Sequence record: OR844650.1
Reading direction: 5' to 3' (one strand)
Length of the DNA stretch: 64,000 nt
The notes under the pieces are model-generated. The model had not been told where the DNA came from, made no database searches, and saw only the letters and a program-made list of their open reading frames with translations. Within the stretch, counting starts at the first letter, position 1. Each line of letters begins with the position of its first letter. A program made the translations under genes and the position numbers. Below, piece after piece: positions 38,904-58,361 of this stretch.

Positions 38904-38904
38904 A

Positions 38905-39443: not shown

Positions 39444-40592
39444 ATGTTACCTTTTGTTAGAATGTTTGATTATGGGAATGAAGCACCTACCAACTCTGGG
39501 CGTTTTAAAATATATTCCAGTGATTCTATGTATCTTCATGATACTTATACTGACAAGTTGTATGCATCTTCTGCGACGAATTGGGGTACTGGTACAGGTG
39601 TAGCATCGAGTAAATTTATTCTTTGTGCGGAGAATGTTAAACGAGTTCTATTGGAAGATAACAGTAGTGATTGTCAATTGTATGAAGAGAAAGGTACTGG
39701 AAAAGTTTTTATCACTGGTAACACGAAGGCATTCACTGGTGTAACTGATAGAAAAACTTTGTGGACGGACTGTACTACGTGGATAACATCAAGTGGTATT
39801 AATGTTTCTGATATAAAATACATGAGTAGTTTTTATGATATGAAGGTGAATTTGATAACAAACGATGGTACATTGTATTGTTGTGGAGCTAACAATATAT
39901 CGAACATATCATCATTTGGTGATGGCACAAACATTAATTCTTTTAACACATTCAAAAGAGTAGATACTATAACTTCGGTTAAAAAGGCAGTTGGTAACAT
40001 TTATTTGCGAGAAGATAATACTTTATGGGGTTGTGGTTTTAACTATTACTACCAGTTGGGCACGGGTAATCAAACTTCTATTACTGGGGTGACGATGATT
40101 TCTTCGGATGTTATAGATTTTAATGTAAGTTATCAGAGTACATTTTTTATCAAATCGGATAATAATTTGTACGCTTGTGGTAAACAGTTCGGTGCACAAT
40201 ATGGGAACGAATTTGGTACAGGTGGTACTTCCTCTTCTACTGATATACAATATAAAACTCCCACATTATTGAGTGCAGGTGTTTATAGTTTATATACTTG
40301 TGTTGGTAACATGGCATCACATATAGTTAAAGGTGATGAAGTACTTTATGCATCTGGAAGCAACTCGTCTGGTCAATTAGGTGTTGGTAATAATAATAAT
40401 CAGTACTCCTATACTCCTTCATATACTTCGTTTAATACCTCTTGTAATTTGGTACGCACCCCATCTGGTTCACTTATACTTACTGATACTGGAAAATTAT
40501 ATTATTGTGGCCTTGCAATAGTAGTAATGGGTGGTATTTCTGGACAGAACGTTCTTAATTATACAGAAGTCGATATGTCATTTTTGCAGTAA
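39444..40592 (+). CDS. MLPF-leader RCC1/BLIP-II-like beta-propeller protein 1
   Basis: GxNxxGQLG-type repeats (CGFNYYYQLGTG, SGSNSSGQLGVG); 382 aa. Confidence 0.85.
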   Translation: MLPFVRMFDYGNEAPTNSGRFKIYSSDSMYLHDTYTDKLYASSATNWGTGTGVASSKFILCAENVKRVLLEDNSSDCQLYEEKGTGKVFITGNTKAFTGVTDRKTLWTDCTTWITSSGINVSDIKYMSSFYDMKVNLITNDGTLYCCGANNISNISSFGDGTNINSFNTFKRVDTITSVKKAVGNIYLREDNTLWGCGFNYYYQLGTGNQTSITGVTMISSDVIDFNVSYQSTFFIKSDNNLYACGKQFGAQYGNEFGTGGTSSSTDIQYKTPTLLSAGVYSLYTCVGNMASHIVKGDEVLYASGSNSSGQLGVGNNNNQYSYTPSYTSFNTSCNLVRTPSGSLILTDTGKLYYCGLAIVVMGGISGQNVLNYTEVDMSFLQ

Positions 40593-40600
40593 ATTAATAT

Positions 40601-40660
40601 GCCAGTACTTGATACTGGCTTTTTTTGATTAAATATAGTATAATGAATAAAGGAGGAAAT
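40601..40660 (+). promoter_or_regulatory. Terminator + TAAATA promoter + RBS cassette
   Basis: GCCAGTA-CTTGA-TACTGGC-T7, TTAAATATAGTATAATGAATAAAGGAGG. Confidence 0.85.
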
Positions 40661-41770
40661 ATGTTACCTTTTGTAAGAATGGTTAAGTACGGGAATATTG
40701 CACCAGTACCGAAAAAAATAAAGAAAGTTATAGCAGGATATGATAATTTATATGTACTATATGGTGATGGTTCGCTATATGGTTGTGGAATCAATAACTA
40801 TCAACAGTTAAATATTGATGGAACTGCTACACAAAATAATTGGGTACTAATTACCAATGGTGTTAGTAATGCATGGGCTGGTGGATACAATATTTTATAT
40901 TTGAAAGAAGATAAATTTATAATGCACGGAACTAATGTCTCATTAGGTTTAGGAAATACTACAATTCCATTAGGTGGAGTAGATGTAACTTCTTCATTCC
41001 CAGATATCTCTAATATTAAAATGATATCCATTGGTTTTGATTCAATGCACTATGTTAGTGCTGATGGTACAACTGTATATGGAAGAGGTATGAACACAAA
41101 TGGTTCTGTTGGTTCAGGTAGTACTTACTCACAGAGTACTTTCACTTCAGTACTGAATAATGGAACTAATCAGGTTATTGATATATTTGGTAACGTTAAT
41201 AATACAGTGCTTCTAACATCGAATGGTGAGCTTCGAGCATGTGGGACAAGTGCTTATGGTTCTATAGGAAATGAAACTGGTAAGTGGACATCGTTTGGTT
41301 TAAAATTATCTGGCACTAAAATAATGGGTGGTAATGGGTATAGTACGCTTGCATATACAAATTCGGGAATGTACCACTCAGGGTGGCAGTTAAATGGGGA
41401 ACTAGGAAATGGTTTAGATACTAACGTACAGGTATATCCATTTCAATTTAACTCTAAAACGATAGATAGCAAGATAGATAAAATTGCCAAATCATCATCT
41501 GGGTCATATGTTAACATGTACTCAACAACAGAAGGAAAGATATATACGACAGGTTCGTTTGGTAAAAACGGGTCAACTACTGCATTGAATTTGTTCACCA
41601 ATACATTAACACTTATAAATTACAATCCAGATACCGCCTCGTTGTATACGTGCACAAACTTCAGTGTTGTGTATGATGGTAATGAAACTATTGCTGTAAG
41701 TGGTAGTCCTACATATGTACCAGGGGGCGTTGCCGCTAATAGATGGACTACAATTCCATTACCCAAGTAA
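40661..41770 (+). CDS. MLPF-leader RCC1-like protein 2
   Basis: 369 aa; close paralogue of 54854-55963. Confidence 0.85.
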   Translation: MLPFVRMVKYGNIAPVPKKIKKVIAGYDNLYVLYGDGSLYGCGINNYQQLNIDGTATQNNWVLITNGVSNAWAGGYNILYLKEDKFIMHGTNVSLGLGNTTIPLGGVDVTSSFPDISNIKMISIGFDSMHYVSADGTTVYGRGMNTNGSVGSGSTYSQSTFTSVLNNGTNQVIDIFGNVNNTVLLTSNGELRACGTSAYGSIGNETGKWTSFGLKLSGTKIMGGNGYSTLAYTNSGMYHSGWQLNGELGNGLDTNVQVYPFQFNSKTIDSKIDKIAKSSSGSYVNMYSTTEGKIYTTGSFGKNGSTTALNLFTNTLTLINYNPDTASLYTCTNFSVVYDGNETIAVSGSPTYVPGGVAANRWTTIPLPK

Positions 41771-41774
41771 TACT

Positions 41775-41841
41775 ATGCCAGTACTTGATGCTGGCATTTC
41801 TTTTTGTATTAAATATAGTATAATGTATAAAGGAGGAAAAT
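41775..41841 (+). promoter_or_regulatory. Terminator + TAAATA promoter + RBS cassette
   Basis: Same repeat. Confidence 0.85.
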
Positions 41842-43023
41842 ATGTTACCTTTTGTTAGAATGTTTGATTATGGGAACGTCGTTGAGCCACCTGTGGGTAC
41901 ACGTTATACCTGTAGTGACTATAGTGCGACTTATAGTTTAATAAAGGATGGTGTGTTATATGTATCTGGGATGAATAACTATTATCAGTTAGGTAATAAC
42001 ACTAACGTAACACGTTACAACGAGTGGTTAAAAGTTCCAGAGACTGATAGTGTTAAGTTTTGTAGTACTGGTTATAGTCAGACAATGTATCTGACTAACA
42101 ATGGTAGGATAATGATAGCAGGTGAAGATCCTACTTCCAGTGCGACTTCGGTAAGTGTAAAGGTTTGGACGGATATAACTTCTAGATTTCGTGCAGTTGA
42201 TACTAAAAAGATTGTTTATATTTCAATAGAACGCTTTGGTGTAATGATGATCATGGAAGATGGTTCAGTATGGGCGTGTGGTGTTGATAATACTGGTTGG
42301 AGTGGACAAGGGAGTAAGACTGTTGGTTTCTTTACTTTCAGACAAATATACACCGGAAGTGCAGGAAGTGCAGTTGCTTGTACTGCTGGTACTGGTACTG
42401 CGAGAATTCTGTTAGCTAATGGAACAATCTTGTCCTCTGGTACTAATACATATCATCAATGTAATGCTAGTACTAATCCGGCTGTTCTAACATTCACTGA
42501 ATCATTCCCTGGGGTTGATCCTTCATTGATATATCAAATCAAGATGTGTAATAACAACTGTATTATATTTTTGAGTGATAAGAGATATTACGGTACTGGC
42601 TGGGGAAGTTTTGGTGCATTGGGTGATGGTGATATTACGGGTTCGAATAATAAATTCTATGCAGGTACATTGTCAGTTGCTCCTAAAAACATGCGTGCTT
42701 ATATGTCGTATCTATGTAGTTCTTCTGGGGATTCTAGTATGTACATAGGCGATGATAATTTCATATACACCTGCGGTTATCGTGGGAGGAACTTAATAAA
42801 TGCCACTACAGATATTGGTACGTTCACGAAATGCATTCAAAGTGCACAAGGATACAAGAATGGACTTATATATAGTGGGAATTATTGTGCTGTAGTTTTT
42901 GATCCAGATTTGGGTTCAGGAATGTCATATGCGGTTTCATCACCAAAATTGAATTCTCCAGCACCACAGGCTAGTGTTCCAGCATTGGGTATGAGTTCGT
43001 TACAATCTATCATTTTACCATAA
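41842..43023 (+). CDS. MLPF-leader RCC1-like protein 3
   Basis: 393 aa; SGMNNYYQLGN. Confidence 0.85.
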   Translation: MLPFVRMFDYGNVVEPPVGTRYTCSDYSATYSLIKDGVLYVSGMNNYYQLGNNTNVTRYNEWLKVPETDSVKFCSTGYSQTMYLTNNGRIMIAGEDPTSSATSVSVKVWTDITSRFRAVDTKKIVYISIERFGVMMIMEDGSVWACGVDNTGWSGQGSKTVGFFTFRQIYTGSAGSAVACTAGTGTARILLANGTILSSGTNTYHQCNASTNPAVLTFTESFPGVDPSLIYQIKMCNNNCIIFLSDKRYYGTGWGSFGALGDGDITGSNNKFYAGTLSVAPKNMRAYMSYLCSSSGDSSMYIGDDNFIYTCGYRGRNLINATTDIGTFTKCIQSAQGYKNGLIYSGNYCAVVFDPDLGSGMSYAVSSPKLNSPAPQASVPALGMSSLQSIILP

Positions 43024-43026
43024 ATG

Positions 43027-43098
43027 ATACCAGTACTGAAATATGTGCTGGTATTTTTTTTGTAAATACATTATAATTATTATATGGAGATTTTAGTT
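43027..43098 (+). promoter_or_regulatory. Divergent terminator + TAAATA promoter cassette
   Basis: ATACCAGTAC/GTGCTGGTAT stem, T tract, TAAATA at 43063. Confidence 0.7.
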
Positions 43099-44229
43099 AT
43101 GTTACCTTTTGTTAGAATGTTTGATTATGGGAATACAGTGGCTGCTCCCACTGGTATAAAGGATTTCCAAGCAAATGGAAGCCACTGTATGGCACTAACA
43201 TATAGTGGTGAGATGTGGGCTTATGGTACAAGTACAAGTGGATCAATGGGAACCGGATTCACGGTGGGTGCTGCTGAGAAGGGTTGGTACAAGTCTAACA
43301 TTAGTAATGTTAAATCATTCAGTTCTAATATGCAGACTAGCACAGTGGCTTTGACAAATGATGATAGAGTGCTAGTTTGTGGCTCAACTAGATTTGACAA
43401 ATTCAGTACTCCAGATATTGCATCATCTAACCTTGATTGGTTGGATGTTACTGATCATATTCCACAGGAAGTTATTGATGCTGGGATGAAGCAAGTTATT
43501 AACCACGCATATTATGTTGCCATTCTTACTGAAAACAATCTATTATATAGTGTGGCATTATCTTTGGGTAATACTAGTACTATAATAGATAGAACATGGC
43601 GAAGAAATACATTTGGTGATATACAAGTTGAACGTGTTGTTTCGTTGACACAAACCCCAAGTGGTCCTTTGTGTATAGTTCAAGATGCTGCCGGATACCA
43701 GTATGGTATTGGATATAATGGTAATAAGATTATTGATAATACTTCCACTAATTCATATTCTGTATATACCAAAATGGGTACACTTCCTTACAATGAATTT
43801 GCCATATCGAATAGCGGGAAATTCAGTTCAGCGGTATTATCAGATGGGAGAAGTGTTTATAGTGGTACATTTCCAAAGTCATTCAATAATAGTTTTGGTT
43901 CATTTTTGAAAGTTGGTGCGGTATCAGATACTGTGTTTGGTTTAGATGCAAAAAATATGCGTGGTCAATATGGTCAAAATCAATTACCAATTGCGTCGGC
44001 TGATAACAATGCAAGTAATGGTGTTGTGAACCTTCGTAATGTTCCAGCGGGAACACAAACGAAAGACATTCGATTTATATGCGGAAATGATGTAAAGAAC
44101 GTTTATATCATATACACAAATGAAGACGGCATTAGCTCATTTTATGGATTGGGACCAAACTTTGATCAAAATTCCTCAGCATATGCACAATTCGTCAAAG
44201 TGGATTTGCCAGGGGCATTATTAAATTAA
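43099..44229 (+). CDS. MLPF-leader RCC1-like protein 4 (divergent)
   Basis: 376 aa; YGTSTSGSMGTG, NMRGQYGQ. Confidence 0.8.
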   Translation: MLPFVRMFDYGNTVAAPTGIKDFQANGSHCMALTYSGEMWAYGTSTSGSMGTGFTVGAAEKGWYKSNISNVKSFSSNMQTSTVALTNDDRVLVCGSTRFDKFSTPDIASSNLDWLDVTDHIPQEVIDAGMKQVINHAYYVAILTENNLLYSVALSLGNTSTIIDRTWRRNTFGDIQVERVVSLTQTPSGPLCIVQDAAGYQYGIGYNGNKIIDNTSTNSYSVYTKMGTLPYNEFAISNSGKFSSAVLSDGRSVYSGTFPKSFNNSFGSFLKVGAVSDTVFGLDAKNMRGQYGQNQLPIASADNNASNGVVNLRNVPAGTQTKDIRFICGNDVKNVYIIYTNEDGISSFYGLGPNFDQNSSAYAQFVKVDLPGALLN

Positions 44230-44239
44230 GGAGAGAAAT

Positions 44240-45382
44240 ATGTTACCTTTTGTGAGGATGGTTAAGTTCGGGAATATTGCACCTGCACAAATAGGTAGAT
44301 ATAAAATATACAGTTCATCTTCTTCAATATTTTTATTGGATACCCAAAAACACAATTTGTATAGTACATCGAACATTAATTATACTAGTGGTACAGGTAA
44401 TGTTGAGCCTAAATTTGTGTTAAGTGCAACTAATGTTAAAAGATTATTACTTTCAGATAATAGTTGTGCAATGCAAATATATGAAGATATGAATGGACGT
44501 GCAGCGATGTGTGGTACAAGAACTGCATATAGTGGGGTTACAAATGATAATGTACTGGTATGGACGGATTGCACTACATGGTTCACAAATGTAGGGTTGA
44601 ATGTATCAGATATTCAGTACATGTCTGGTTTTTATAATTTGAAACTAAACATAGTTATGAATAATGGTGATTTGTGGTGTAGTGGGAAAAACAACACTAC
44701 TACTATGTCATCATTTGGTAATGGCACAAATATCGATTCATTTAATCAGTTTACCAAAATAACAACCATATCAAATGTTATTAAAGCAACCGGAAATATA
44801 TACTTATGTGCAGATAATACTTTATGGGGATGTGGTTTAAACTCTTATTATCAGTTAGGGACAGGTACTCAAACATCCAGTATTAATTTGATTATGATGG
44901 CTTCTAATGTTATCGACTCTAATGTTGGTCTTCAAAATACTTATTACTTGACTAATAATAAAGAACTTTATGGTTGTGGTACACAATTTGGTACAACTTA
45001 CGGGAATGAATTTGGAACAGGAAGGCAGGGAACAGCAATACAGTATAAGACTCCTACTATAATTTTCACAAATGCAGATGGTATGGCTGTTTGTGTCGGT
45101 AATATGTCTACTCATGTTATTCAATATGATAAAGTTTTTAGTTCTGGTAATAATGCCCTTGCACAGTTAGGTGTAGGCAACCGTGACAATGTGTACACAT
45201 ATACACAATCATTTGATAATTTCAAAATGGATTCTTCTATAGTACGTGCAAACGTTGGAACATTGATACTGACAGCAGACAATAAGTTATATTACAGTGG
45301 GCGAAATGATGTTGTTATGGGTGGAACAAGCACACAATACACAATGGTTTTCAGTGAAGTTAATATGTCATTTATACAATGA
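44240..45382 (+). CDS. MLPF-leader RCC1-like protein 5
   Basis: 380 aa; close paralogue of protein 1. Confidence 0.85.
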   Translation: MLPFVRMVKFGNIAPAQIGRYKIYSSSSSIFLLDTQKHNLYSTSNINYTSGTGNVEPKFVLSATNVKRLLLSDNSCAMQIYEDMNGRAAMCGTRTAYSGVTNDNVLVWTDCTTWFTNVGLNVSDIQYMSGFYNLKLNIVMNNGDLWCSGKNNTTTMSSFGNGTNIDSFNQFTKITTISNVIKATGNIYLCADNTLWGCGLNSYYQLGTGTQTSSINLIMMASNVIDSNVGLQNTYYLTNNKELYGCGTQFGTTYGNEFGTGRQGTAIQYKTPTIIFTNADGMAVCVGNMSTHVIQYDKVFSSGNNALAQLGVGNRDNVYTYTQSFDNFKMDSSIVRANVGTLILTADNKLYYSGRNDVVMGGTSTQYTMVFSEVNMSFIQ

Positions 45383-45388
45383 ATTAAT

Positions 45389-45453
45389 GCCAGTACTCAA
45401 GTACTGGCTTTTATTTTTTATTAAATATAGTATAATGAATAAAGGAGGGAAAT
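45389..45453 (+). promoter_or_regulatory. Terminator + TAAATA promoter + RBS cassette
   Basis: GCCAGTAC-TCAA-GTACTGGC. Confidence 0.85.
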
Positions 45454-46656
45454 ATGTTACCTTTTGCTAGAATGGTTAAGTACGCGAATATTGCACCAGG
45501 GCCAGAACCTATAGAGTTCTCAAATGTTTTACAACAACATTATACAAACTGTATGTATCTACATAGCCCAACTAATACTTTATATGGTTATGGTAGTAAT
45601 AACTTTTATCAATTTGGTCTTGGGAATTCAGCAGCAGTTGCGTCATTTACAGTACTTGCAACGCGATGTGCAGCCTTTTGGCTTGGTGTTCAAGGTTCAT
45701 TGATGATTGATTTGGATAATAAAATATACTACACTGGGTCGGTTGGTGCATTTTCTGATTATGGAGATGCAACACCTGTTAATGGTTATTTGAGAACATG
45801 GACTGATGTTACTGCTTCATTTAATAAAATTGGTGTTATGGCTAATATGATCAAGTGTGTGTATATAGGTGAAAGTACTAGAATATTATTAACCGATGGT
45901 AGAGTAATTGCGTGTGGAAGAAATACCAATGGTGAATGTGGGTCTGGTAATCAAAATTCCATACCTACACTAACAGTTATGACTAATATGGGTGAAGTTA
46001 CACATATGGCATGTTCATTACAAGGAACGCACTATATTAAATCAAATAAAAAGGCATGGTTTTGTGGTAAGGATAACTTCGGTGAAAGTGGTTGTGGTGC
46101 TAGTTCTATGATATATTTGAACAAATATGTGATGAGTGATGTCGAACATATTAGTACTACATACGATGTTACTTGGTGGTTTACTACTGGTGGGCCTGTA
46201 TATTATAGCGGGGCTAACAGTACTGGACAAGCTGGTAATGGTACGACTACATCGGTAAATCAGCTAACACCAATTAGGAACACATCGGTCACGGTTGATG
46301 TAAGTAAGTACAGTACTTTTATTTGTCCAAGTAATATGGGAAATGCATCAATTGGTGCACCTATGGCACAATACGCACCATATGTTAGAAGTAGTGGTGC
46401 TAACGGATACGGTCAAGAAGGTAATGGAACTAATACATTAGTTAGGACTTGGAATATTTTTAATCTTAATGCAATAAGTGGTGGTTATGACAATGTTCTT
46501 ATGGCATCTAAAGATTGGAGCAGAACCATAATAATTACTAAAGATTATAAATTATATGCATGTGGTGGCTGGAATGGTAATGGTGGTAGATTGCCTGATG
46601 GCACTTATAGTATTACTACACTAACATTAATGCCAACGCAGTTATGGCAACAATAG
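45454..46656 (+). CDS. MLPF-leader RCC1-like protein 6
   Basis: 400 aa; CGRNTNGECGSG, SGANSTGQAGNG. Confidence 0.85.
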   Translation: MLPFARMVKYANIAPGPEPIEFSNVLQQHYTNCMYLHSPTNTLYGYGSNNFYQFGLGNSAAVASFTVLATRCAAFWLGVQGSLMIDLDNKIYYTGSVGAFSDYGDATPVNGYLRTWTDVTASFNKIGVMANMIKCVYIGESTRILLTDGRVIACGRNTNGECGSGNQNSIPTLTVMTNMGEVTHMACSLQGTHYIKSNKKAWFCGKDNFGESGCGASSMIYLNKYVMSDVEHISTTYDVTWWFTTGGPVYYSGANSTGQAGNGTTTSVNQLTPIRNTSVTVDVSKYSTFICPSNMGNASIGAPMAQYAPYVRSSGANGYGQEGNGTNTLVRTWNIFNLNAISGGYDNVLMASKDWSRTIIITKDYKLYACGGWNGNGGRLPDGTYSITTLTLMPTQLWQQ

Positions 46657-46664
46657 GAGGAATT

Positions 46665-47774: not shown

Positions 47775-47780
47775 CATAAT

Positions 47781-47844
47781 GCCAGTACTCAGTACTGGCT
47801 TTTCTTTTTTATTAAATATAGTATAATGAATAAAGGAGGAATAT
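47781..47844 (+). promoter_or_regulatory. Terminator + TAAATA promoter + RBS cassette
   Basis: Same repeat. Confidence 0.85.
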
Positions 47845-49024: not shown

Positions 49025-49029
49025 ACACA

Positions 49030-49094
49030 ATGCCAGTACTTGAGTACTGGCATTCTTTTTGATTAAATATAGTATAATGAATAAAGGAGGAAAT
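49030..49094 (+). promoter_or_regulatory. Terminator + TAAATA promoter + RBS cassette
   Basis: Same repeat. Confidence 0.85.
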
Positions 49095-50249: not shown

Positions 50250-50256
50250 AATTAAA

Positions 50257-50325: not shown

Positions 50326-51516
50326 ATGTTACCTTTTGTTAGATTGTTTGATTATGGGAATATCACACCTGAACCTCTTCTAATTAAGAAAATAATACCA
50401 ACTGATACTGATGTGGTTGTACTTTATACTGACGGTCAACTATACGCACGAGGAAATAATAGTTATGGGAAGTTCGGTCGCGGAAATAATAATGCAGTAA
50501 GGTCGTGGACATTAATTAGAGAAAATGTCAAAGATTGCTGGATGACACAAGGAACTTTGTTAGTTCAAGATAAGGACTTAAATTATTTTTATTGTGGATA
50601 TGGTGGTCATATTGGTTTAGAAACTAGTACTACATCATTTTTAAGTTATAACCAATATATTGAAAATTTGTACACACAAAGTTCAGGTACTTCAATTAAA
50701 CAGATGTATGCAGGTACTACGTGGTTTACTTTCTTAATGGATAATAATACAATATGGAGTACTGGTTGGAGTGGGGCTAGACAATTCGCTGATGGTACTG
50801 GTAGTACTCAACAAATAACAGATGGATCATTTGTAAAAGCTGTCACGCCTAATGTTGATATTGCACGAATACAGTCAACAAATAGCTGTGTAATGTTTTA
50901 TGATACACAAAATAATTTATATATTGGTGGTAGTACATCAGGTATAAGTACTACTGATACATGGACTCCATACAATCAATATACTTTATATCAGCCAAGT
51001 ACAACATATACAAAAACATTACAATATGTTGTATGTACAATTGGTGCAGTCAGTGCTTTAGTGGAGAATCCAAGTACAGGAGCACGTCAGTTCCTAGTGG
51101 GTGGGAACGCCAATAATGGGGCATGGGGTAATAACACTACGTCTAGTACAGCACGAGCAGTATTAGGAAATAATAGTACAACCTTACCACCCGGTACTTT
51201 GTATTCAATTCATACTGGATACCCAGCACAATCTAGTATACTAGTTACGAGTTCTGGTGTATATGCAACAGGTTTAAATGCGAGTAGTTATGCTGGTTCA
51301 TTGGGTGTTGGTTCTAATGTTACCATTGGTAAATTTACTGCATGTCCATTGCCGTCAGAAATAACATATTCTATGTATGATAAAATAAAAATATATCGAG
51401 GGTCGTTACGTACTTTCCTAACTGCTGATATGAAAAATATATATTCAACCGGAACTTATGATGATGGTGGTCCTAGTACAAATAGATATGTACTTGATAC
51501 TCCAAGACAACTATAA
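50326..51516 (+). CDS. MLPF-leader RCC1-like protein 10
   Basis: 396 aa; RGNNSYGKFGRG. Confidence 0.85.
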   Translation: MLPFVRLFDYGNITPEPLLIKKIIPTDTDVVVLYTDGQLYARGNNSYGKFGRGNNNAVRSWTLIRENVKDCWMTQGTLLVQDKDLNYFYCGYGGHIGLETSTTSFLSYNQYIENLYTQSSGTSIKQMYAGTTWFTFLMDNNTIWSTGWSGARQFADGTGSTQQITDGSFVKAVTPNVDIARIQSTNSCVMFYDTQNNLYIGGSTSGISTTDTWTPYNQYTLYQPSTTYTKTLQYVVCTIGAVSALVENPSTGARQFLVGGNANNGAWGNNTTSSTARAVLGNNSTTLPPGTLYSIHTGYPAQSSILVTSSGVYATGLNASSYAGSLGVGSNVTIGKFTACPLPSEITYSMYDKIKIYRGSLRTFLTADMKNIYSTGTYDDGGPSTNRYVLDTPRQL

Positions 51517-51523
51517 CAATAAT

Positions 51524-51589
51524 GCCAGTACTTTGTACTGGCTTTTATTTTTTTTGATTAAATATAGTATAATGAATAAAGGAGGAAAT
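51524..51589 (+). promoter_or_regulatory. Terminator + TAAATA promoter + RBS cassette
   Basis: Same repeat. Confidence 0.85.
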
Positions 51590-52777
51590 ATGTTACCTTT
51601 TGCAAGAATGGTTAAGTACGGGAATAAAGTCATTCCATATGTTCCCAATTTTACTAAATTAGTCACCCCAGCAGTTGGTTATTCATTTACATGCACAATG
51701 CTGCTTGATGTAAATGGATCAGTGTGGGCTATGGGTCTTCAGAATGCAGGAATTTTTGGGTTAGGTAATACTACACAGGTTACTGAATGGACAAAAATAT
51801 ATAACAATGTTAAAGATTTTTGGTGCAGCACGGGGAATGGTTTTTGTCTAATACGAACAAATGATGATAGATTCTTTTATAGTGGTTTAGATAAATGGCT
51901 AGGTAACAATACAACAAATACTGTAACAACATTCACTGAATGTACGAGTTATTTTACACAATTTGGTATTTCAAAAATCAAAGAGATATATGTAGGTCTT
52001 GATTATGCTTTGATTTTAGGTACTGATAATAGTTTATATTTGTTAGGTGATAATAAAAATTCAAAGTTTGGTTTAAACACTGCATCATATTTTAATAAAT
52101 TTACATTTTTAGTCGATAATGTTAAAAAATTCTGTTCATCCATCACACCATCTAACTGGATTATTAAACTAGATAATACAATATGGCGTACTGGGACAAC
52201 ATCTCATGGAACGTTGGGAAATGGAGTTCAAAACACATATATATTTCCTTGGGTTCAATATAAGGGCACACCTGTTACCGAAGCTATAGACGTTTTTTGT
52301 AGTGCGAGTTATATTGGTATTATAACTAAAGGTACACCAGAATCATGTCCTATGTATACACTAGGCTATCAAGCTGATGGTCAGTTGGGTAATAATACTA
52401 CAGCAGGGGGTTATAAATTAACGCCAACATTATCGAAAACCGTTCCAGATGATAGTGAATTCATTCGAATTGAAAACATCTCATCCCGTGGTCTGGTATA
52501 TTATAGCTCTGGTAAAATTTATAGTACTGGTTATAATAACAATGGTCAGTTGGCAAATAATACTAAAATCAATTCTGGTTCATTTGTTGAAGCAATTTTA
52601 CCTAATGGTGTTAACTTTAAGAAAAGTGAATCACTTGTAGCTGGGAACGATGCAACGTTGTATATGTACATTAATAATAAATTATACTACGCGGGGAAAT
52701 CTCCTGATAATATTTCAGCAAGTAGTTCGTCTGTCATGAAAGAATTCCCACTTCCAACAATTAATGCCAGTACTTGA
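51590..52777 (+). CDS. MLPF-leader RCC1-like protein 11
   Basis: 395 aa; TGYNNNGQLAN; stop codon lies inside the next terminator stem. Confidence 0.85.
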   Translation: MLPFARMVKYGNKVIPYVPNFTKLVTPAVGYSFTCTMLLDVNGSVWAMGLQNAGIFGLGNTTQVTEWTKIYNNVKDFWCSTGNGFCLIRTNDDRFFYSGLDKWLGNNTTNTVTTFTECTSYFTQFGISKIKEIYVGLDYALILGTDNSLYLLGDNKNSKFGLNTASYFNKFTFLVDNVKKFCSSITPSNWIIKLDNTIWRTGTTSHGTLGNGVQNTYIFPWVQYKGTPVTEAIDVFCSASYIGIITKGTPESCPMYTLGYQADGQLGNNTTAGGYKLTPTLSKTVPDDSEFIRIENISSRGLVYYSSGKIYSTGYNNNGQLANNTKINSGSFVEAILPNGVNFKKSESLVAGNDATLYMYINNKLYYAGKSPDNISASSSSVMKEFPLPTINAST

Positions 52778-52830
52778 TACTGGCTTTCTTATTTGTATTA
52801 AATATAGTATAATGAATAAGGAGGGGAATT
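52766..52830 (+). promoter_or_regulatory. Terminator + TAAATA promoter + RBS cassette
   Basis: Identical to 53980-54044. Confidence 0.85.
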
Positions 52831-53973
52831 ATGTTACCTTTTGCAAGAATGGTTAAGTACGGGAATATAGCACCAGTTCCAGTAGTTCCTACAATAAAAG
52901 ATTTTAAGATTGGCTTTTCACATGAAGTGTTATTGGACAGTGCAGGTGATGCATGGGGTATTGGATACAATACAGATGGGCAGTTAGGCTTTTTGGATGC
53001 AAATACAAATTCACTAGGTGCGTGGTCTAAGATATATACTGATGTTCGATTAATTGGAGTTACTGCTAGATATACAGTGGTAGTTACTAATAATAATAGA
53101 ATACTATATGCAGGAAATAACTTAATTTCTAGTACTACTACTCTTGGGTGGACCGATATAACTGCCAGTATGGGTCCGGTTGCGGTGGATAGCATCGATG
53201 CATTATATTGCACAGATGGTATGATGCATATTAAAACTTCAGATGGTTCTTTATATGCATATGGTCGTAACATGAACGCAAACAGTGGTGTTACTGGCGG
53301 TGTTATTAGTGTTGCAACTAAGGTTAATTTGCCTTCTGCTGTAAATGACATGCGATATACGTTTAGTTATGGTTCAGTACTATGTCGCTTGGATACAACT
53401 TCTATATACGCATGGGGACGAAACACAAATGGTGAATTAGGCCAGGGTAATACAACAGCTATCGTTACACCAAAACTATTGTCTGGTGCTTCTATTGCAA
53501 TGGGTACTTCGTATAATGCTACTGCAATTGTTTCTGGTTCTGCATTGTTGCTTACATGTGGTGGACAAAGCAGTGGGCAGTTAGGTAATGGTATTACAAC
53601 TGATGGTAATGTATACACCTTTGGTGTCAGGACATACCCAGGCGATCTTAATACAATAAGAAGTCCAGTGGATTGCAGTACAACTTACACCTCTGCATTT
53701 ATGAGTCCAGATGGTATATATTACACTGGTGCTAACCGAAGTATGTTTGGTGGTATTAGTGGTGCTTCTACCGTTGCTGTATATACTAAATGTAGTGATT
53801 TACCAATAACATATTCTAATATAATTCAGTGGAGTAGTGGTACTATAGGTGGTGCTATATGTAGTAGTACAGAGTTATACCAATGTGGTATAGGTAGATA
53901 CATTGCTGGTGATGGTGCGAGCACAACCAGGTATGGATTTAGGAAGACACCATTACCTTGGGATACTTATTGA
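52831..53973 (+). CDS. MLPF-leader RCC1-like protein 12
   Basis: 380 aa; WGRNTNGELGQG. Confidence 0.85.
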   Translation: MLPFARMVKYGNIAPVPVVPTIKDFKIGFSHEVLLDSAGDAWGIGYNTDGQLGFLDANTNSLGAWSKIYTDVRLIGVTARYTVVVTNNNRILYAGNNLISSTTTLGWTDITASMGPVAVDSIDALYCTDGMMHIKTSDGSLYAYGRNMNANSGVTGGVISVATKVNLPSAVNDMRYTFSYGSVLCRLDTTSIYAWGRNTNGELGQGNTTAIVTPKLLSGASIAMGTSYNATAIVSGSALLLTCGGQSSGQLGNGITTDGNVYTFGVRTYPGDLNTIRSPVDCSTTYTSAFMSPDGIYYTGANRSMFGGISGASTVAVYTKCSDLPITYSNIIQWSSGTIGGAICSSTELYQCGIGRYIAGDGASTTRYGFRKTPLPWDTY

Positions 53974-53979
53974 CATTAC

Positions 53980-54044
53980 GCCAGTACTTGATACTGGCTT
54001 TCTTATTTGTATTAAATATAGTATAATGAATAAGGAGGGGAATT
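53980..54044 (+). promoter_or_regulatory. Terminator + TAAATA promoter + RBS cassette
   Basis: Same repeat. Confidence 0.85.
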
Positions 54045-54782
54045 ATGTTACCTTTTGGAAGAATGGTTAAGTACGGGAATAAAATTGAATATAAGCCACA
54101 TGGTGAACAATTAATCACGACAATAGGAACAACACAATTTACAGTTCCTGCTGGCGTTACCGAAATATCAGTATGTGTTATTTCGCCGGGTGGTCAACGT
54201 GGTGCTGGTGGCGGCTTATCGTGGCGTAATAATATTCCGGTTACTAGTGGTGAGTACTTAAGTGTTTCTCTTACACATCCCAACACTACTACACCAGTTG
54301 AAAACGGTTTATATCGTGGAACTGAAAAACTATGTGTTAGCTTCACTGGTGAATATAGGGTTGGTGGACTAGGTGGGAAAGCTGCTAACGCTATTAATGA
54401 TGGTGGTGGTAATGGGGGCAACGCTGGTGTAAGTGGTGGTGCAGTCATTGGTGGTGGTGCTGGTGGCTACACTGGTAAAGGTGGTAACGGAGATGCAATC
54501 ACTGGTGAAAATGGTGCTGGGGGCGGCGGTGGTGGTGGTGCATTCTATAATACCTCGTTCATTGGTACGGGTGGTGGTACTGGTATCATTGTTCAAGGTG
54601 CTAATGGTATTGGCGGTAGATACGATGGTTCATATAATGGTGGTGCTGGTAGTGGTGGTGCTGGTAAGATGTATGGTGGTGGTGGTAGTATATGGGATAA
54701 TTTTTCTTATACGGCTGCTGGTGGTGGTGCTGTGCGAATAATATGGGGACGTGGGAGATATTATCCTAACAATTCAGTCTAA
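54045..54782 (+). CDS. MLPF-leader glycine-rich protein (virion fibre-type Gly-rich domain), array member 13
   Basis: MLPFGRMVKYGN leader, then GTTQFTVPAGVTEISVCVI..GG and GGGAVRIIWG typical of phage Gly-rich structural domains. Confidence 0.8.
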   Translation: MLPFGRMVKYGNKIEYKPHGEQLITTIGTTQFTVPAGVTEISVCVISPGGQRGAGGGLSWRNNIPVTSGEYLSVSLTHPNTTTPVENGLYRGTEKLCVSFTGEYRVGGLGGKAANAINDGGGNGGNAGVSGGAVIGGGAGGYTGKGGNGDAITGENGAGGGGGGGAFYNTSFIGTGGGTGIIVQGANGIGGRYDGSYNGGAGSGGAGKMYGGGGSIWDNFSYTAAGGGAVRIIWGRGRYYPNNSV

Positions 54783-54789
54783 AATATAG

Positions 54790-54853
54790 GCCAGTACTTG
54801 ATACTGGCTTTCTTATTTGTATTAAATATAGTATAATGAATAAGGAGGGAAAT
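54790..54853 (+). promoter_or_regulatory. Terminator + TAAATA promoter + RBS cassette
   Basis: Same repeat. Confidence 0.85.
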
Positions 54854-55963
54854 ATGTTACCTTTTGTTAGAATGATTAAGTACGGAAATATTGCACCTGA
54901 AGCACCAAAGATAAAGAAAGTACTGTGCGGTCTTGATAATTTGTACGTCCTCTATGGCGATGGCTCACTTTATGGTTGTGGGGTTAATACGTATTTGCAG
55001 TTAAACGTTGAAAATACAGCAACAAGAAATACTTGGATATTAATTTCAGAAGGTGTTACTGATGCATGGGCTGGTGCGTACAATATTCTTTATCTCAAGG
55101 GTGAAGAATTCATAATGCATGGAGTTACCACACAATTAGGCACAGGAAATACTATGATTCCGTTGGGTGGTTTGAATGTTACTTCTTCATTTCCACATAT
55201 ATCTAATATTAAAATGATATCAATTGGTGCAGATACAATGCACTACGTTGATGCTAGTGGTTCGATTGTTTATGGTAGAGGCATGAATGGTAACTATTCA
55301 CTCGGTGGTGGGTATTCCACGGCTCAGAGTACTTTTGTTTCAGTTATTAATACCGGAGCTAATACAGTTCTTGATATATTGGGTACACAGAATAACACAT
55401 TAATATTAACATCAAATAATGAACTTCTCGGTTGCGGGAGCAGTGGGTATGGTTCACTTGGCGTAAGTCCAGGACAGTATACTACACTAGTAAGCAGGTT
55501 AACAAGTGTTAAACTATTTGGTGGTAACAGTACTGGTACTCTTGCTTATTCAGCCAGCAATATATACAACGCAGGTTGGCAGTATATTGGTCAACTTGGT
55601 AACGGTATTACAACGAACACACAAGTATATCCATTTGCATTTAACTCCACTACTATTGATAGTAAGATACATAAAATATCAAAATCAAGTGCGACTTCAT
55701 ATGTTAATATGTACGCAACAACCGAAGGAAAGATATACAGTACTGGTGAATTTGGTAGAAATGGTTCGGGAGGTGGTTTGAGTAGATTCACCAATACACT
55801 AACTTTAGATAATTACAACCCAGAAAAATCATCATTATACACATGTGCACATTTTAGTATAGTATTTGATGGTAATAATCAAATTTATGCTTGTGGTTCT
55901 TTTTTGTATGTACCAGGTCCTATTACCACGAACTCATGGTCTGCAATTACAATGCCGAAATAA
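54854..55963 (+). CDS. MLPF-leader RCC1-like protein 14
   Basis: 369 aa; close paralogue of protein 2. Confidence 0.85.
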   Translation: MLPFVRMIKYGNIAPEAPKIKKVLCGLDNLYVLYGDGSLYGCGVNTYLQLNVENTATRNTWILISEGVTDAWAGAYNILYLKGEEFIMHGVTTQLGTGNTMIPLGGLNVTSSFPHISNIKMISIGADTMHYVDASGSIVYGRGMNGNYSLGGGYSTAQSTFVSVINTGANTVLDILGTQNNTLILTSNNELLGCGSSGYGSLGVSPGQYTTLVSRLTSVKLFGGNSTGTLAYSASNIYNAGWQYIGQLGNGITTNTQVYPFAFNSTTIDSKIHKISKSSATSYVNMYATTEGKIYSTGEFGRNGSGGGLSRFTNTLTLDNYNPEKSSLYTCAHFSIVFDGNNQIYACGSFLYVPGPITTNSWSAITMPK

Positions 55964-55977
55964 TACTATAAAACTAT

Positions 55978-56041
55978 GCCAGTACTTTGTACTGGCTTTC
56001 TTATTTGTATTAAATATAGTATAATGAATAAAGGAGGAATT
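55978..56041 (+). promoter_or_regulatory. Terminator + TAAATA promoter + RBS cassette
   Basis: Same repeat. Confidence 0.85.
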
Positions 56042-57211
56042 ATGTTACCTTTTGGAAGAATGTTCAAGTACGGAAATATTAAACCAACTCTTCCTGAAAT
56101 AAAGAAATTGGATGGTAGTCAATTACATGTCGGATTACTTTATAGTACAGGGAATATGTACATGCGTGGTTCTGGTTCGAACTATAAATTAGGTACAGGG
56201 GATGCTAGTGATGTATTAGGTGGTTGGGTACATGTACCCTATGAAGTTGATGATTTTTGGGCGTGTGTATCCGGTACATTAATAAAGACTGTTGATAATA
56301 AATTATATTGTGCAGGTCTATACATGGGTGGATATTTTGGGGCTAGTGGTTCATATGTTAACTGGACTGAAGTAACTTCATTATTTGTAGGTATTGACGT
56401 GTCGCAAATAAAGAATATAGAATTTACGTCAGCGGGTACTTCCGGTAGTACACTAATATTGATGTTAGATGGTCGTTTATATGGGTTCGGTATGAACAGT
56501 AGATCTGAGTTAGGTGTTAATAACAAAGTTGTATCTCCCATTCTCATAGATACTGAGGTAAGTGCAATAGGAGCACATAAGTTAGGGGGTTCATCGTTCC
56601 ATTATATAAAAGGCGGTAAGTACTACAGATGTGGAACATCGGTTGGTAGTAATATTGGAAGTTCTTCTTTAACTACTTTTACGGTATTGAGTATTCCTGA
56701 TAACGTTATATCTATGCAAATATTATATGACAACGTACAGTTATTATGTTTAGGAAGTTCTGGATATAGTATCTATATGGCTGGTTCTAATGATTATGGT
56801 GGAAGAGGTGGTGGTGGTTCTACTGTTTACACTACATTCAGGAAAATAGATCTTACAGGATTTGGTGTTGCTCCCAGTGAAATACTATTTGAAAATGCCG
56901 GGAATGGTTATGTTAATATATCAACTGATAGTACTGGGGTATATACATGTGGTGGTGGGGCTGGTGTTAATGGTTTAGGTAGACCAACTGATGTGATACC
57001 AAGTTCACAGTTGGGTTCGGTTCAGTTCAGTACTGGAGTAGAACCATCAAATATAAGTCGTGTGTATTCACAGAGTTCGAGTTCTGTTATATATTGTATA
57101 GTTAATAATGAATTGTACTGGGCTGGTAGTAATTCATATTTTACTGATCAAACCACAAATACTGGTACACAATTTTCATTTATTAAGATGAAGGATATGC
57201 CTTCTGCTTAG
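56042..57211 (+). CDS. MLPF-leader RCC1-like protein 15
   Basis: 389 aa; FGMNSRSELG; paralogue of protein 8. Confidence 0.85.
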   Translation: MLPFGRMFKYGNIKPTLPEIKKLDGSQLHVGLLYSTGNMYMRGSGSNYKLGTGDASDVLGGWVHVPYEVDDFWACVSGTLIKTVDNKLYCAGLYMGGYFGASGSYVNWTEVTSLFVGIDVSQIKNIEFTSAGTSGSTLILMLDGRLYGFGMNSRSELGVNNKVVSPILIDTEVSAIGAHKLGGSSFHYIKGGKYYRCGTSVGSNIGSSSLTTFTVLSIPDNVISMQILYDNVQLLCLGSSGYSIYMAGSNDYGGRGGGGSTVYTTFRKIDLTGFGVAPSEILFENAGNGYVNISTDSTGVYTCGGGAGVNGLGRPTDVIPSSQLGSVQFSTGVEPSNISRVYSQSSSSVIYCIVNNELYWAGSNSYFTDQTTNTGTQFSFIKMKDMPSA

Positions 57212-57216
57212 ATTTT

Positions 57217-57282
57217 ATGCCAGTGCCTTGTACTGGCATTTTTTGTCCTAAATATAATAACGATTTACATTTGGAGGATACA
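57217..57282 (+). promoter_or_regulatory. Divergent terminator + TAAATA promoter cassette
   Basis: ATGCCAGTG-CCT-TGTACTGGCAT stem, TAAATA at 57249. Confidence 0.7.
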
Positions 57283-57706
57283 ATGCTACCCTTTCGAAGA
57301 ATTATCACATCATCAAAAAAGAACATACAACCTTCTGTTACAAAAATAGCTTCATCTGATACGACAGTTTTTGCCCTTATGTCAGATGGTACGTTGTACA
57401 GTAGAGAATCTCAAGAGTTTGGGTTATTCATATTTTTCTAATCATATTATAACTTCATTGGGTGTTTACGCAACTGGTAATAACACAGGCGATAACGCAG
57501 GTCAATTGGGTATAGGTACACAAACAGATGTGTCGGCCTATACCAAATGTGTACTACCAATAGAGATGAATATGAATAACGTATATGTTACAGCAACTTT
57601 ATACAGAACTTACTTAACCGATGGTATACAAATTTACAGTACTGGACAATATATTACAGACGGTGGAGTTGCCAGTACTGTATTTGTTAAAGATTCACCA
57701 TTTTAG
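57283..57706 (+). pseudogene. Internally deleted MLPF/RCC1 relic (member 16)
   Basis: MLPFRR... N-terminal about 40 aa joined out of frame to about 95 aa resembling the C-terminus of protein 10. Confidence 0.7.
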
Positions 57707-58349: not shown

Positions 58350-58361
58350 AACTCCTTATAC

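What the first reader, a model, noticed from the sequence alone, without database searches (positions are those of the whole stretch)
39444..57706. 18 kb cassette array of 16 genes: constant leader plus hyperdivergent RCC1/BLIP-II-like beta-propellers
Seen: 14 genes of 369-400 aa with RCC1-type GxNxxG(Q/E)LG repeats (one frameshifted), one Gly-rich gene and one relic, all starting MLPF and mostly individually promoted. Non-adjacent close pairs (1/5, 2/14, 8/15, 10/16) show repeated reshuffling. Established: RCC1/BLIP-II seven-bladed propellers are protein- or ligand-binding platforms, and BLIP-II is an enzyme inhibitor. Inference: a late-expressed, virion-associated repertoire of interchangeable binders, either receptor/glycan-sensing tips on fibres or co-injected inhibitors of host defences. 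I know of no functional description.
Basis: partly seen in the sequence, partly recalled or inferred. Interest (0 to 1): 0.88.

Follow-up and report, generated by a model that had tools for sequence, protein, structure and literature searches.

The report
Shuffled array of tagged virion binders
A giant E. coli phage carries sixteen tandem gene cassettes that put one fixed 12-residue N-terminal tag on very different binding domains (mostly RCC1-type propellers); related phages swap whole cassettes and package these proteins into their particles, so this is probably a repertoire of alternative surface binders whose exact role is still untested.

Summary
Window 39444-57706 (+ strand) holds 16 cassettes that all start MLPF-x-R: 13 intact RCC1-type propeller genes of 369-400 aa, one split propeller gene, one Gly-rich gene and one terminal relic. 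The window is an Asteriusvirus jumbo coliphage, 100% identical to phage ECO103 4-12-1.

New here:
- Thirteen junctions carry a hairpin terminator; eleven of these, plus the junction upstream of gene 1 (twelve cassettes in all), also carry a private -10-like box and Shine-Dalgarno sequence, followed by the 12-codon leader.
- Homology blocks against eight relatives begin and end in this module (58 of 63 ends), so whole cassettes are exchanged.
- Nine phages hold 42 cassette types among 117 cassettes, in different orders.
- Orthologous cassettes are under purifying selection (pooled pN/pS 0.27).
- The leader is predicted to be a free tail outside the propeller. It is conserved across Rak2-like jumbo phage genera and also sits on Gly-rich and ConA-like proteins.

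Every leader protein with proteomic evidence is virion-associated (published MS for phAPEC6 and GAP32_001; record annotation for GAP32_002 and CBB).

Best reading: a virion-docking tag carrying interchangeable binders, probably displayed externally. The main rival is a T4-like capsid-targeting tag on ejected proteins. "Late expression" and the BLIP-II likeness are not supported. "DNA condensation" is unlikely.

The parts
39416..39443 (+). Junction upstream of gene 1: -10-like box plus Shine-Dalgarno (variant, no array-type hairpin)
   Evidence: (2 mismatches to the 24-nt box)
39444..40592 (+). Gene 1: leader plus RCC1-type propeller, 382 aa (cluster D)
   Evidence: 95% identical to phAPEC6 gp549, which was detected in virions (PMC7247149)
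40601..40660 (+). Junction module: hairpin terminator, T-run, -10-like box, SD
40661..41770 (+). Gene 2: leader plus RCC1-type propeller, 369 aa (64% identical to gene 14)
41775..41841 (+). Junction module
41842..43023 (+). Gene 3: leader plus RCC1-type propeller, 393 aa
43026..43098 (+). Junction module, diverged variant (hairpin present, box not within 3 mismatches)
43099..44229 (+). Gene 4: leader plus RCC1-type propeller, 376 aa; no terminator after it
44240..45382 (+). Gene 5: leader plus RCC1-type propeller, 380 aa; no own module, probably co-transcribed with gene 4; 53% identical to gene 1
45389..45453 (+). Junction module
45454..46656 (+). Gene 6: leader plus RCC1-type propeller, 400 aa; no terminator after it
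46665..47774 (+). Gene 7: leader plus RCC1-type propeller, 369 aa; no own module, probably co-transcribed with gene 6
47781..47844 (+). Junction module
47845..49024 (+). Gene 8: split RCC1-type cassette. The leader-bearing 5' part and the propeller body lie in different frames (one frameshift would explain it; no stop within either piece). Closest paralogue is gene 15 at 39%
   Evidence: the same split state occurs in all 5 phages that carry this cassette
49029..49094 (+). Junction module
49095..50249 (+). Gene 9: leader plus RCC1-type propeller, 384 aa
50255..50325 (+). Junction module
50326..51516 (+). Gene 10: leader plus RCC1-type propeller, 396 aa
51524..51589 (+). Junction module
51590..52777 (+). 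Gene 11: leader plus RCC1-type propeller, 395 aa. This is the modelled member: a seven-bladed propeller with residues 1-13 as an unstructured tail
52766..52830 (+). Junction module (the hairpin overlaps the end of gene 11)
52831..53973 (+). Gene 12: leader plus RCC1-type propeller, 380 aa
   Evidence: 84% identical to phAPEC6 gp005, which was detected in virions
53980..54044 (+). Junction module
54045..54782 (+). Gene 13: the same leader on a Gly-rich domain protein, 245 aa (phrog_4474; homologues carry Pfam Gly_rich_2)
54788..54853 (+). Junction module
54854..55963 (+). Gene 14: leader plus RCC1-type propeller, 369 aa
   Evidence: 99% identical to phAPEC6 gp009, which was detected in virions
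55978..56041 (+). Junction module
56042..57211 (+). Gene 15: leader plus RCC1-type propeller, 389 aa
   Evidence: 99% identical to phAPEC6 gp010, which was detected in virions
57217..57284 (+). Junction, hairpin terminator only (box diverged)
57285..57706 (+). Gene 16: terminal relic. The leader and the remaining body are out of frame (at least one frameshift), and most of the body is missing relative to the copies in relatives, which are also split (one large deletion). Its 3' end overlaps the convergent gene 57687-58349

Best explanation
The locus is a recombination-ready array of expression cassettes. Each makes a protein built as a 12-residue N-terminal tag (MLPF-x-R-h-x-x-Y-G-N), a short Pro-rich linker and a variable binding domain. 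The domain is usually an RCC1-type seven-bladed propeller and once a Gly-rich domain. The tag is a virion-incorporation (docking) signal shared by all cassettes. The variable domains are alternative binders. They are most likely displayed on the outside of the particle, on fibres, whiskers or the baseplate periphery, where they would recognise different host-surface or environmental ligands. The repeated junction (hairpin terminator, private -10-like box, SD, leader codons) gives each cassette its own expression signals. It also supplies about 130 nt of shared sequence in which homologous recombination swaps, adds, deletes and reorders whole cassettes between co-infecting relatives. Shown: cassette anatomy, whole-cassette mosaicism, purifying selection, the propeller fold, the leader lying outside the fold, portability of the leader across folds and genera, and virion presence in relatives (published MS). 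Inferred: that the leader is what causes incorporation, that the proteins are external, and that they bind host-surface ligands.
For: Anatomy. Leader codons 1-12 have 87% mean pairwise nucleotide identity against about 30-40% in the gene bodies. M1, L2, P3, F4 and R6 are invariant in 117 of 117 Asteriusvirus cassettes. Leader outside the fold: AF2 of gene 11 gives pLDDT 84 overall, but residues 1-13 score below 50 and have no secondary structure. Peptide-level selection: the same peptide is kept in Salmonella phage Munch with varied synonymous codons. Variants of it occur in GAP32, CBB, Serratia BF, Yersinia Yen9-04 and Xanthomonas XaC1. A tblastn search with the leader finds only 56 records, all Rak2-like jumbo phages. 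Portability: the leader also sits on a Gly-rich protein (gene 13; Munch_544), on phrog_6011 'virion structural protein' (GAP32_002, Munch_540, CBB gp442 and gp443, BF gp372) and on a Laminin_G_3/ConA-like protein (Munch_534, 36.7 bits against a 27.6 cut-off). Most non-jumbo homologues of gene 13 carry a different short tag, M[LI]E[LM]L. Virion presence: eight phAPEC6 leader proteins by MS (PMC7247149), GAP32_001 (PMC5259590), and record annotations for GAP32_002 and CBB gp442/443. Support for external binders: RCC1 propellers occur inside annotated tail-fibre proteins of Pseudomonas phages Littlefix and PollyC, the latter with a T7 tail-fibre N-terminal domain. The best PDB fold match of gene 13 is the cyanophage Pam3 fibre (probability 0.94-0.96), whose Gly-rich tip is described as receptor-binding (PMC9608196). 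The ConA-like member matches C-terminal parts of giant virion and baseplate proteins. In phage W70 a distant homologue carrying a leader variant (W70_106: hhalign probability 94%, E 1.3e-7) is a virion protein encoded directly after tail-fibre gene W70_107 (PMC11370258). The array proteins are not basic (pI 5.1-8.6). Shuffling: 42 types among 117 cassettes in 9 phages, in different orders. Of 63 homology-block ends inside the array, 58 lie -77 to +56 nt from a cassette ATG. Within one phage pair, pS ranges from 0 to 0.39 between cassettes.
Against: No experiment places any of these proteins on the outside of a particle. MS coverage in phAPEC6 is low (1-5 unique peptides). The array is not in the structural module: it sits about 5 kb from the terminal repeat, among small genes. 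Its promoter box differs from the late motif of the capsid genes. A short constant N-terminal peptide on otherwise unrelated proteins is also the hallmark of T4 internal proteins, which are packaged inside the head. The Pam3 match has a poor global superposition (TM 0.28). CBB has whiskers but no RCC1 gene, so the propellers are not required for whiskers. No docking partner was identified.
Confidence: 0.5

Rival explanations
1. The leader is a capsid-targeting sequence of the T4 internal-protein type. It would take the proteins into the prohead core, and they would then be ejected with the DNA to act inside the cell, for example as inhibitors of host defence proteins. On this reading the array is a counter-defence repertoire.
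For: [quoted passage not shown] The leader is a short N-terminal tail outside the fold. The proteins are in virions at low MS coverage (PMC7247149). phAPEC6 has an inner body whose components are unknown (PMC7247149). The array lies beside the terminal repeat and small early-type genes, not in the tail module. A Gly-rich homologue with the other tag is encoded directly upstream of the terminase, portal, protease and capsid genes.
Against: The proteins are 40-kDa closed propellers that are near neutral in charge, unlike small basic internal proteins. The other folds that share the leader (ConA-like, Gly-rich) are typical extracellular binding modules, and one matches external baseplate and fibre proteins. 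RCC1 propellers occur in bona fide tail-fibre proteins. W70_106 is encoded in the tail-fibre module. No acidic cleavage-type residue is conserved at the end of the leader. The cleavage rule of this phage's protease is unknown, so that last point is weak.
Confidence: 0.25
2. The proteins are 'DNA condensation proteins' that organise the packaged genome or build the inner body. This is the reading behind the database names, and the phAPEC6 paper suggests it.
For: They are present in virions. phAPEC6 has an inner body of unassigned composition (PMC7247149). They have RCC1 similarity.
Against: The name is transferred from eukaryotic RCC1, and the fold is a general binding platform. The proteins are not basic. 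Content and order differ between phages that are otherwise 80-99% identical, which is not expected of a packaging scaffold. CBB lacks RCC1 genes altogether (PMC5259590). The 137-kb phage W70 has them (PMC11370258). The same leader carries unrelated folds.
Confidence: 0.05
3. The constant 5' end is only a nucleotide-level element (translation initiation region plus recombination site). The proteins act in the infected cell, and their detection in virions is incidental carry-over.
For: Within Asteriusvirus, synonymous positions of codons 2, 3, 4 and 6 are 93-100% conserved. The whole junction, non-coding part included, is repeated. The promoter box is not the late type.
Against: In Munch the peptide is kept while codons vary. 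Variants of the peptide persist across genera with 23-30% genome similarity (PMC13070987, Table 2). Leader proteins were found in virions in independent studies: phAPEC6 and GAP32_001 by published MS, and W70_106 in W70. GAP32_002 and the CBB leader proteins are annotated as virion structural proteins in their records. The three W70 RCC1 proteins that carry the other tag gave 141-233 spectra (PMC11370258).
Confidence: 0.07

Closest known systems
RCC1-like 'DNA condensation' gene clusters already reported in Rak2-like jumbo phages (phAPEC6, 121Q, PBECO4, GAP32)
   Same: These are the same genes. Eleven RCC1-like proteins are noted in phAPEC6, eight of them in the virion proteome (PMC7247149). 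Multiple copies in 121Q and PBECO4, and GAP32_001 as a virion protein, are noted in PMC5259590.
   Different: Those papers do not describe the constant leader, its presence on non-RCC1 folds, the junction module or the whole-cassette shuffling. They propose DNA ordering, which the present data do not favour.
T-even internal protein (IP) loci with a capsid targeting sequence
   Same: A short constant N-terminal peptide is joined to otherwise unrelated, fast-turning-over proteins that end up in the virion (PMC3012670).
   Different: IPs are small, basic and inside the head, and their leader is cut off by the prohead protease. Here the cargo is a 25-43 kDa near-neutral binding domain. Cleavage and location are unknown. 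I made no sequence comparison with the T4 leader.
PeSL composite promoter-terminator motifs that mediate modular shuffling in T4-like phages (PMC2839356, PMC4122927)
   Same: A repeated stem-loop terminator plus promoter motif lies between variable genes, and recombination breakpoints between related genomes fall in the motif.
   Different: The repeat here extends through the SD and the first 12 codons, so the exchanged unit always keeps the protein tag. The promoter has no recognisable -35 and is private to the array. The cargo is one protein family and not miscellaneous small ORFs.
Distal tail-fibre adhesins and multi-RBP systems (T-even/S16 gp38, cyanophage Pam3 gp24 Gly-rich tip; tail fibres with RCC1 propellers in Pseudomonas phages Littlefix and PollyC)
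   Same: They use the same kinds of binding domain. The Gly-rich domain of gene 13 has the Pam3 fibre as its best PDB match. RCC1 propellers occur as domains of annotated tail-fibre proteins. In W70 a leader-bearing relative is encoded directly after a tail-fibre gene.
   Different: Those are fused to, or encoded beside, their fibre. Here a dozen free-standing binders are encoded far from the tail module and would have to dock through a 12-residue tag. No fibre partner is known.
Eukaryotic RCC1-like domains (RCC1, UVR8, HERC2 RLD, RPGR RLD) and BLIP-II
   Same: Seven-bladed RCC1-type propeller: PDB profile E 8e-33 to the RPGR RLD, and TM 0.73-0.80 to UVR8.
   Different: There is no evidence of Ran-GEF or chromatin functions. 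BLIP-II was not returned by either search.

Membership tests
RCC1-like domain (RLD) propeller superfamily | Sequence match to RCC1 repeat or RLD profiles | tested here: met
   Pfam RCC1 or RCC1_2 is above the curated cut-off in 12 of 14 propeller genes; the genes at 46665 and 56042 are sub-threshold. The family profile hits RPGR, UVR8, HERC and RCC1 chains at E 8e-33 to 1e-15.
RCC1-like domain (RLD) propeller superfamily | Seven-bladed beta-propeller fold | tested here: met
   AF2 model of gene 11: pLDDT 84.1, pTM 0.84. Foldseek TM 0.73-0.80 to UVR8 and 0.62-0.66 to RCC1, HERC2 and RPGR. Only one member was modelled.
RCC1 proper (Ran GEF / chromatin binder, the source of the 'DNA condensation' name) | Guanine-nucleotide exchange on Ran and nucleosome binding | not testable with these tools
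   Bacteria have no Ran or nucleosomes. The proteins are near neutral (pI 5.1-8.6), which does not suggest DNA binding.
BLIP-II | Specific sequence or structural similarity to BLIP-II | tested here: not met
   BLIP-II is not among the 35 PDB profile hits at E <= 0.01 nor among the top 50 Foldseek PDB matches. It may share the broad fold class (the InterPro name is quoted in PMC5259590), but no specific link was recovered.
T4-type internal proteins with capsid targeting sequence | Short conserved N-terminal peptide on otherwise unrelated virion proteins | tested here: met
   virion MS in PMC7247149 and PMC5259590.
T4-type internal proteins with capsid targeting sequence | Leader removed by the prohead protease; protein located inside the head and ejected | not testable with these tools
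   No N-terminal peptide data or localisation were available.
T4-type internal proteins with capsid targeting sequence | Small, basic proteins | tested here: not met
   25-43 kDa, net charge -5 to +5.
PeSL-type shuffling motifs | Repeated terminator stem-loop plus promoter motif between variable genes | tested here: met
   Thirteen + strand hairpin terminators and 12 boxes.
PeSL-type shuffling motifs | Breakpoints between related genomes coincide with the motif | tested here: met
   58 of 63 homology-block ends lie -77 to +56 nt from a cassette ATG, against about 12% expected by position alone.
PeSL-type shuffling motifs | Early sigma-70 promoter with -35 and -10 | tested here: not met
   No -35 at proper spacing. 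The sigma-70 scan shows no enrichment, 101 against 98.5. Expression timing is unknown.
Phage fibre-tip Gly-rich receptor-binding domains (Pam3 gp24 / S16 gp38 type), gene 13 only | Gly-rich domain fold | tested here: inconclusive
   Homologues carry Pfam Gly_rich_2. AF2 pLDDT 92.9. The best PDB matches are the Pam3 fibre at probability 0.94-0.96 but TM 0.28, and the ALK GRD at E 0.08. There was no PDB sequence-profile hit.
Phage receptor-binding proteins in general | Gene in or next to the tail-fibre/baseplate module | tested here: not met
   In the window and its relatives the array is flanked by small genes near the terminal repeat. This feature is met only for the distant relative W70_106.
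Phage receptor-binding proteins in general | Located at the distal end of a fibre and binds a host receptor | not testable with these tools
   No structural or binding data exist.

The most novel reading that the evidence does not exclude
Large myophages may use a general 'tag-and-dock' system. A lineage-specific N-terminal tag of about 10 residues loads interchangeable, structurally unrelated binder domains (RCC1 propeller, Gly-rich, ConA-like) onto a common socket on the virion. The tag is MLPF...YGN or MLPFPIIS in Rak2-like jumbo phages and M[LI]E[LM]L in Vequintavirinae-like phages. One particle would then carry a dozen alternative adhesins, and tropism would evolve by shuffling cassettes at a repeat that always preserves the tag.
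Probability: 0.35. Interest if true: 0.8.

Novelty: new variant of a known kind. Interest (0 to 1): 0.62.

Why it matters
These genes fill about 5% of a 350-kb phage genome. They recur in a whole group of jumbo phages that infect enterobacteria and plant pathogens, and they are annotated everywhere as 'chromosome condensation' proteins on the strength of a name. Three results replace that label with a testable model of how very large phages diversify what their particles bind: the genes are tagged, the tag is portable between folds, and whole cassettes are shuffled at a dedicated junction. If the tag proves to be a docking signal, it would explain how a single particle can carry many alternative binders. 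It would also give a sequence rule for finding virion-associated binders in jumbo phage genomes, where more than 80% of genes have no assigned function.

Tried and rejected
- The exhaustive profile search with the array alignment gave 125,601 hits headed by giant multi-RCC1 proteins. It said nothing about the leader.
- The word-indexed homologue search for gene 11 gave only 15 hits.
- The PDB sequence-profile search for the Gly-rich family gave no hit.
- Literature: the only discussion of function I found is the phAPEC6 paper's DNA-ordering suggestion, echoed in the W70 paper. The Sharanji paper and the 2026 jumbo-phage review do not mention these genes. The JP4 paper only labels them on its genome map, and its held supplements have no hit.
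- There is no tRNA and no Rfam family in the window.
- A sigma-70 promoter with a -35 was rejected. A T4-like late promoter was rejected.
- The leader as the propeller's closing strand was rejected: AF2 leaves residues 1-13 unstructured, and the same leader sits on non-propeller folds.
- Hypermutation or strong positive selection was rejected: pN/pS is 0.15-0.4.
- DNA condensation was rejected as the main reading (see rivals).
- I did not scan the whole genome of this phage for leader genes outside the array, and I did not identify a docking partner.

Full report
IDENTITY AND OBSERVATION

The window is 100% identical over the queried 19 kb to Escherichia phages ECO103 4-12-1 and EC22.5-2. It is 87-98% identical, in patches, to 35 other roughly 350-kb Asteriusvirus-type jumbo phages.

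On the + strand between 39444 and 57706 there are 15 ORFs that open with MLPF[VAG]R[ML], and none elsewhere in the window. A sixteenth leader at 57285 opens the terminal relic.
- Thirteen are intact propeller genes of 369-400 aa.
- One cassette (47845-49024) has its leader part and its body in different frames.
- One (54045-54782) is a 245-aa protein with 28.6% Gly.
- The last (57285-57706) is a remnant.

All 14 propeller genes hit Pfam RCC1-type models. The family profile hits solved RCC1-like domains at E 8e-33. The strict GxNxxG(Q/E)LG string is rare, so the RCC1 call rests on the profiles.

CASSETTE ANATOMY

Upstream of 12 of the 15 genes lies the same module:
- a perfect or near-perfect hairpin followed by a T-run;
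- a conserved box containing a TATAAT-like element and a GGAGG Shine-Dalgarno sequence (12 matches within 3 mismatches, 0 expected);
- then the ATG.

Terminator-like sites number 27 against 7.5 +/- 2.6 expected. They follow 13 of the 15 genes. Genes 4-5 and 6-7 look bicistronic. The box has no -35 partner.

It is also not the (T)ATAAATA motif that I found upstream of the phAPEC6 major capsid, scaffold, baseplate-wedge and other virion genes. None of the 15 array genes has that motif within 100 nt. The array's box is absent from 49 kb of the phAPEC6 structural region but present in the arrays of phAPEC6, fEgEco12 and even Salmonella phage Munch. So 'individually promoted' is a sound motif statement, while 'late' is not shown.

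THE LEADER IS A PEPTIDE MODULE

Codons 1-12 have 87% mean pairwise nucleotide identity against about 30-40% in the bodies. M1, L2, P3, F4 and R6 are invariant in 117 cassettes from nine phages; Y10, G11 and N12 are nearly so.

AF2 modelling of gene 11 gives a confident seven-bladed propeller (pLDDT 84, pTM 0.84; TM 0.73-0.80 to UVR8). Residues 1-13 are an unstructured tail, so the leader is not the propeller's closing strand.

In Munch the peptide (MIPF-x-R/K...Y-G/A-N) is kept although synonymous codons vary. That points to selection on the peptide. Variants occur in GAP32, CBB, Serratia BF, Yersinia fHe-Yen9-04 (MLPFPIIS...) and Xanthomonas XaC1. A tblastn search with the 24-residue N-terminus finds only 56 records, all Rak2-like jumbo phages.

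THE LEADER IS PORTABLE BETWEEN FOLDS

- Gene 13 belongs to a large Gly-rich family (phrog_4474; many homologues carry Pfam Gly_rich_2). Most members from other phages start with a different short tag, M[LI]E[LM]L.
- GAP32_002, Munch_540, BF gp372 and CBB gp442/gp443 carry the leader on a roughly 215-aa phrog_6011 'virion structural protein'.
- Munch_534 carries it on a Laminin_G_3/ConA-like domain that also matches the C-terminal parts of giant virion and baseplate proteins.

VIRION ASSOCIATION (PUBLISHED DATA, RELATIVES)

The phAPEC6 virion proteome lists gp003, 005, 006, 007, 009, 010, 549 and 551 (PMC7247149, Table 1). All eight start MLPF. Four are 84-99% identical to window genes 1, 12, 14 and 15. 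GAP32_001 was a virion MS hit (PMC5259590). GAP32_002 and CBB gp442/443 are annotated as virion structural proteins in their records.

In the unrelated 137-kb phage W70, three RCC1 proteins of the same PHROG are in the virion proteome with 141-233 spectra (PMC11370258). They start with the other tag, MLEM.... W70_106 is also a virion protein. It starts MIPFPII..., it is a distant homologue of the array family (hhalign probability 94%, E 1.3e-7), and it is encoded immediately after tail-fibre gene W70_107.

SHUFFLING

Across the window and eight relatives there are 10-16 cassettes per phage, falling into 42 types (>= 70% identity) among 117 cassettes. Their orders differ. For example, type D is first in the window but fourth in PBECO4 and seventh in slurp01.

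Blocks of >= 90% nucleotide identity between the window and each relative start -77 to -1 nt from a cassette ATG and end +19 to +56 nt into the next cassette's leader. Of 63 ends inside the array, 58 behave this way. The other five lie in the terminal relic.

Orthologous cassettes have pN/pS of 0.15-0.4 (pooled 0.27). Between one pair of phages, pS ranges from 0 to 0.39 from cassette to cassette. The diversity is therefore old paralogy plus allelic replacement by whole-cassette recombination, under purifying selection. It is not hypermutation.

WHAT THE PROTEINS MOST LIKELY DO

The tag as a virion-incorporation signal is the simplest account of three facts: a constant free N-terminal peptide, its portability across folds, and the virion presence of every member that has been examined.

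Where the proteins sit is not known. I lean towards external display for these reasons:
- RCC1 propellers occur as domains of annotated tail-fibre proteins, in Pseudomonas phages Littlefix and PollyC.
- The best PDB matches of gene 13 are the cyanophage Pam3 fibre, whose Gly-rich tip is described as receptor-binding (PMC9608196), and the ALK glycine-rich domain. The global superposition is poor, TM 0.28.
- The ConA-like member resembles external baseplate and fibre proteins.
- W70_106 is in a tail-fibre module.
- The proteins are near neutral in charge.

Against this reading:
- The array lies about 5 kb from the terminal repeat among small genes, not in the tail module (PMC13070987).
- Its promoter is not the late type.
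- The architecture is exactly that described for T-even internal proteins with a capsid targeting sequence (PMC3012670).

The 'DNA condensation' reading is unlikely. Content varies between near-identical phages, CBB lacks RCC1 genes, and the proteins are not basic.

COMPARISON WITH WHAT IS KNOWN

The multi-copy RCC1 genes and their presence in virions are published. I found no description of the leader, its portability, the junction module, the whole-cassette exchange or the second tag in the library searched.

The junction works like a PeSL motif (PMC2839356, PMC4122927) extended into the coding region. The tag works like a capsid targeting sequence or a fibre-docking peptide. I file the locus as a new variant of known kinds.

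BROKEN GENES

Two of the 16 cassettes are broken.
- Gene 8: one frameshift suffices, with no stops within either piece. The same state occurs in all five phages that carry this cassette, and no intact copy exists among the nine sampled.
- Gene 16: at least one frameshift and one large deletion. The terminal cassette is also split in the relatives.

Noticed in passing
window 34550-39341 (- strand): About 20 tandem, tiny paralogous genes (59-81 aa, similar N-termini) and a 219-aa ORF (36682-37341) are transcribed divergently from the array. Relatives have different copy numbers (fEgEco12 g596-g613, WPEC3 CDS077-096, 121Q 249-265). This is a second expandable gene family next to the first.
   Followed up: partly
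window 47845-49024: The split cassette is split in the same way in all five phages that carry it (window, PBECO4, EC.P1, WPEC3, slurp01). The body is 97-100% identical and free of stops, with pN/pS 0.3-0.4 on about 20 differences. It is either an old tolerated break or some form of recoding or internal initiation.
   Followed up: partly
L016:15543-19041 and L020:32932-34167 (Escherichia phage W70): A second short N-terminal tag, M[LI]E[LM]L, heads three RCC1 virion proteins of W70 and most Gly_rich_2 homologues of gene 13 from roughly 150-kb phage contigs. W70_106 carries a variant of the jumbo-phage leader (MIPFPII) and sits directly after a tail-fibre gene.
   Followed up: partly
L002 (fEgEco12), L004 (EC.P1), L005 (WPEC3), compared with window 57687-58763: In these relatives one more RCC1 cassette lies beyond the convergent roughly 220-aa gene that ends the array. 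The window has none there.
   Followed up: no
window 7000-34000: There are very few ORFs of 100 aa or more and many small - strand genes. By comparison with fEgEco12, whose direct terminal repeat starts at about 353.7 kb, this stretch corresponds to the small-gene region that includes the terminal repeat. GC skew changes sign near 34 kb and near 58 kb, where the coding strand switches.
   Followed up: partly
L018:8001-16744 (150-kb contig from a Plesiomonas assembly): A Gly-rich homologue of gene 13 with the MIELL-type tag is encoded directly upstream of the terminase, portal, protease and capsid genes. This context would fit a head-associated role for that family.
   Followed up: no
window 60493-61172 (- strand): Two adjacent 112-113 aa genes are 54% identical paralogues. 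The neighbouring small genes correspond in position to genes annotated as membrane proteins in CBB.
   Followed up: no
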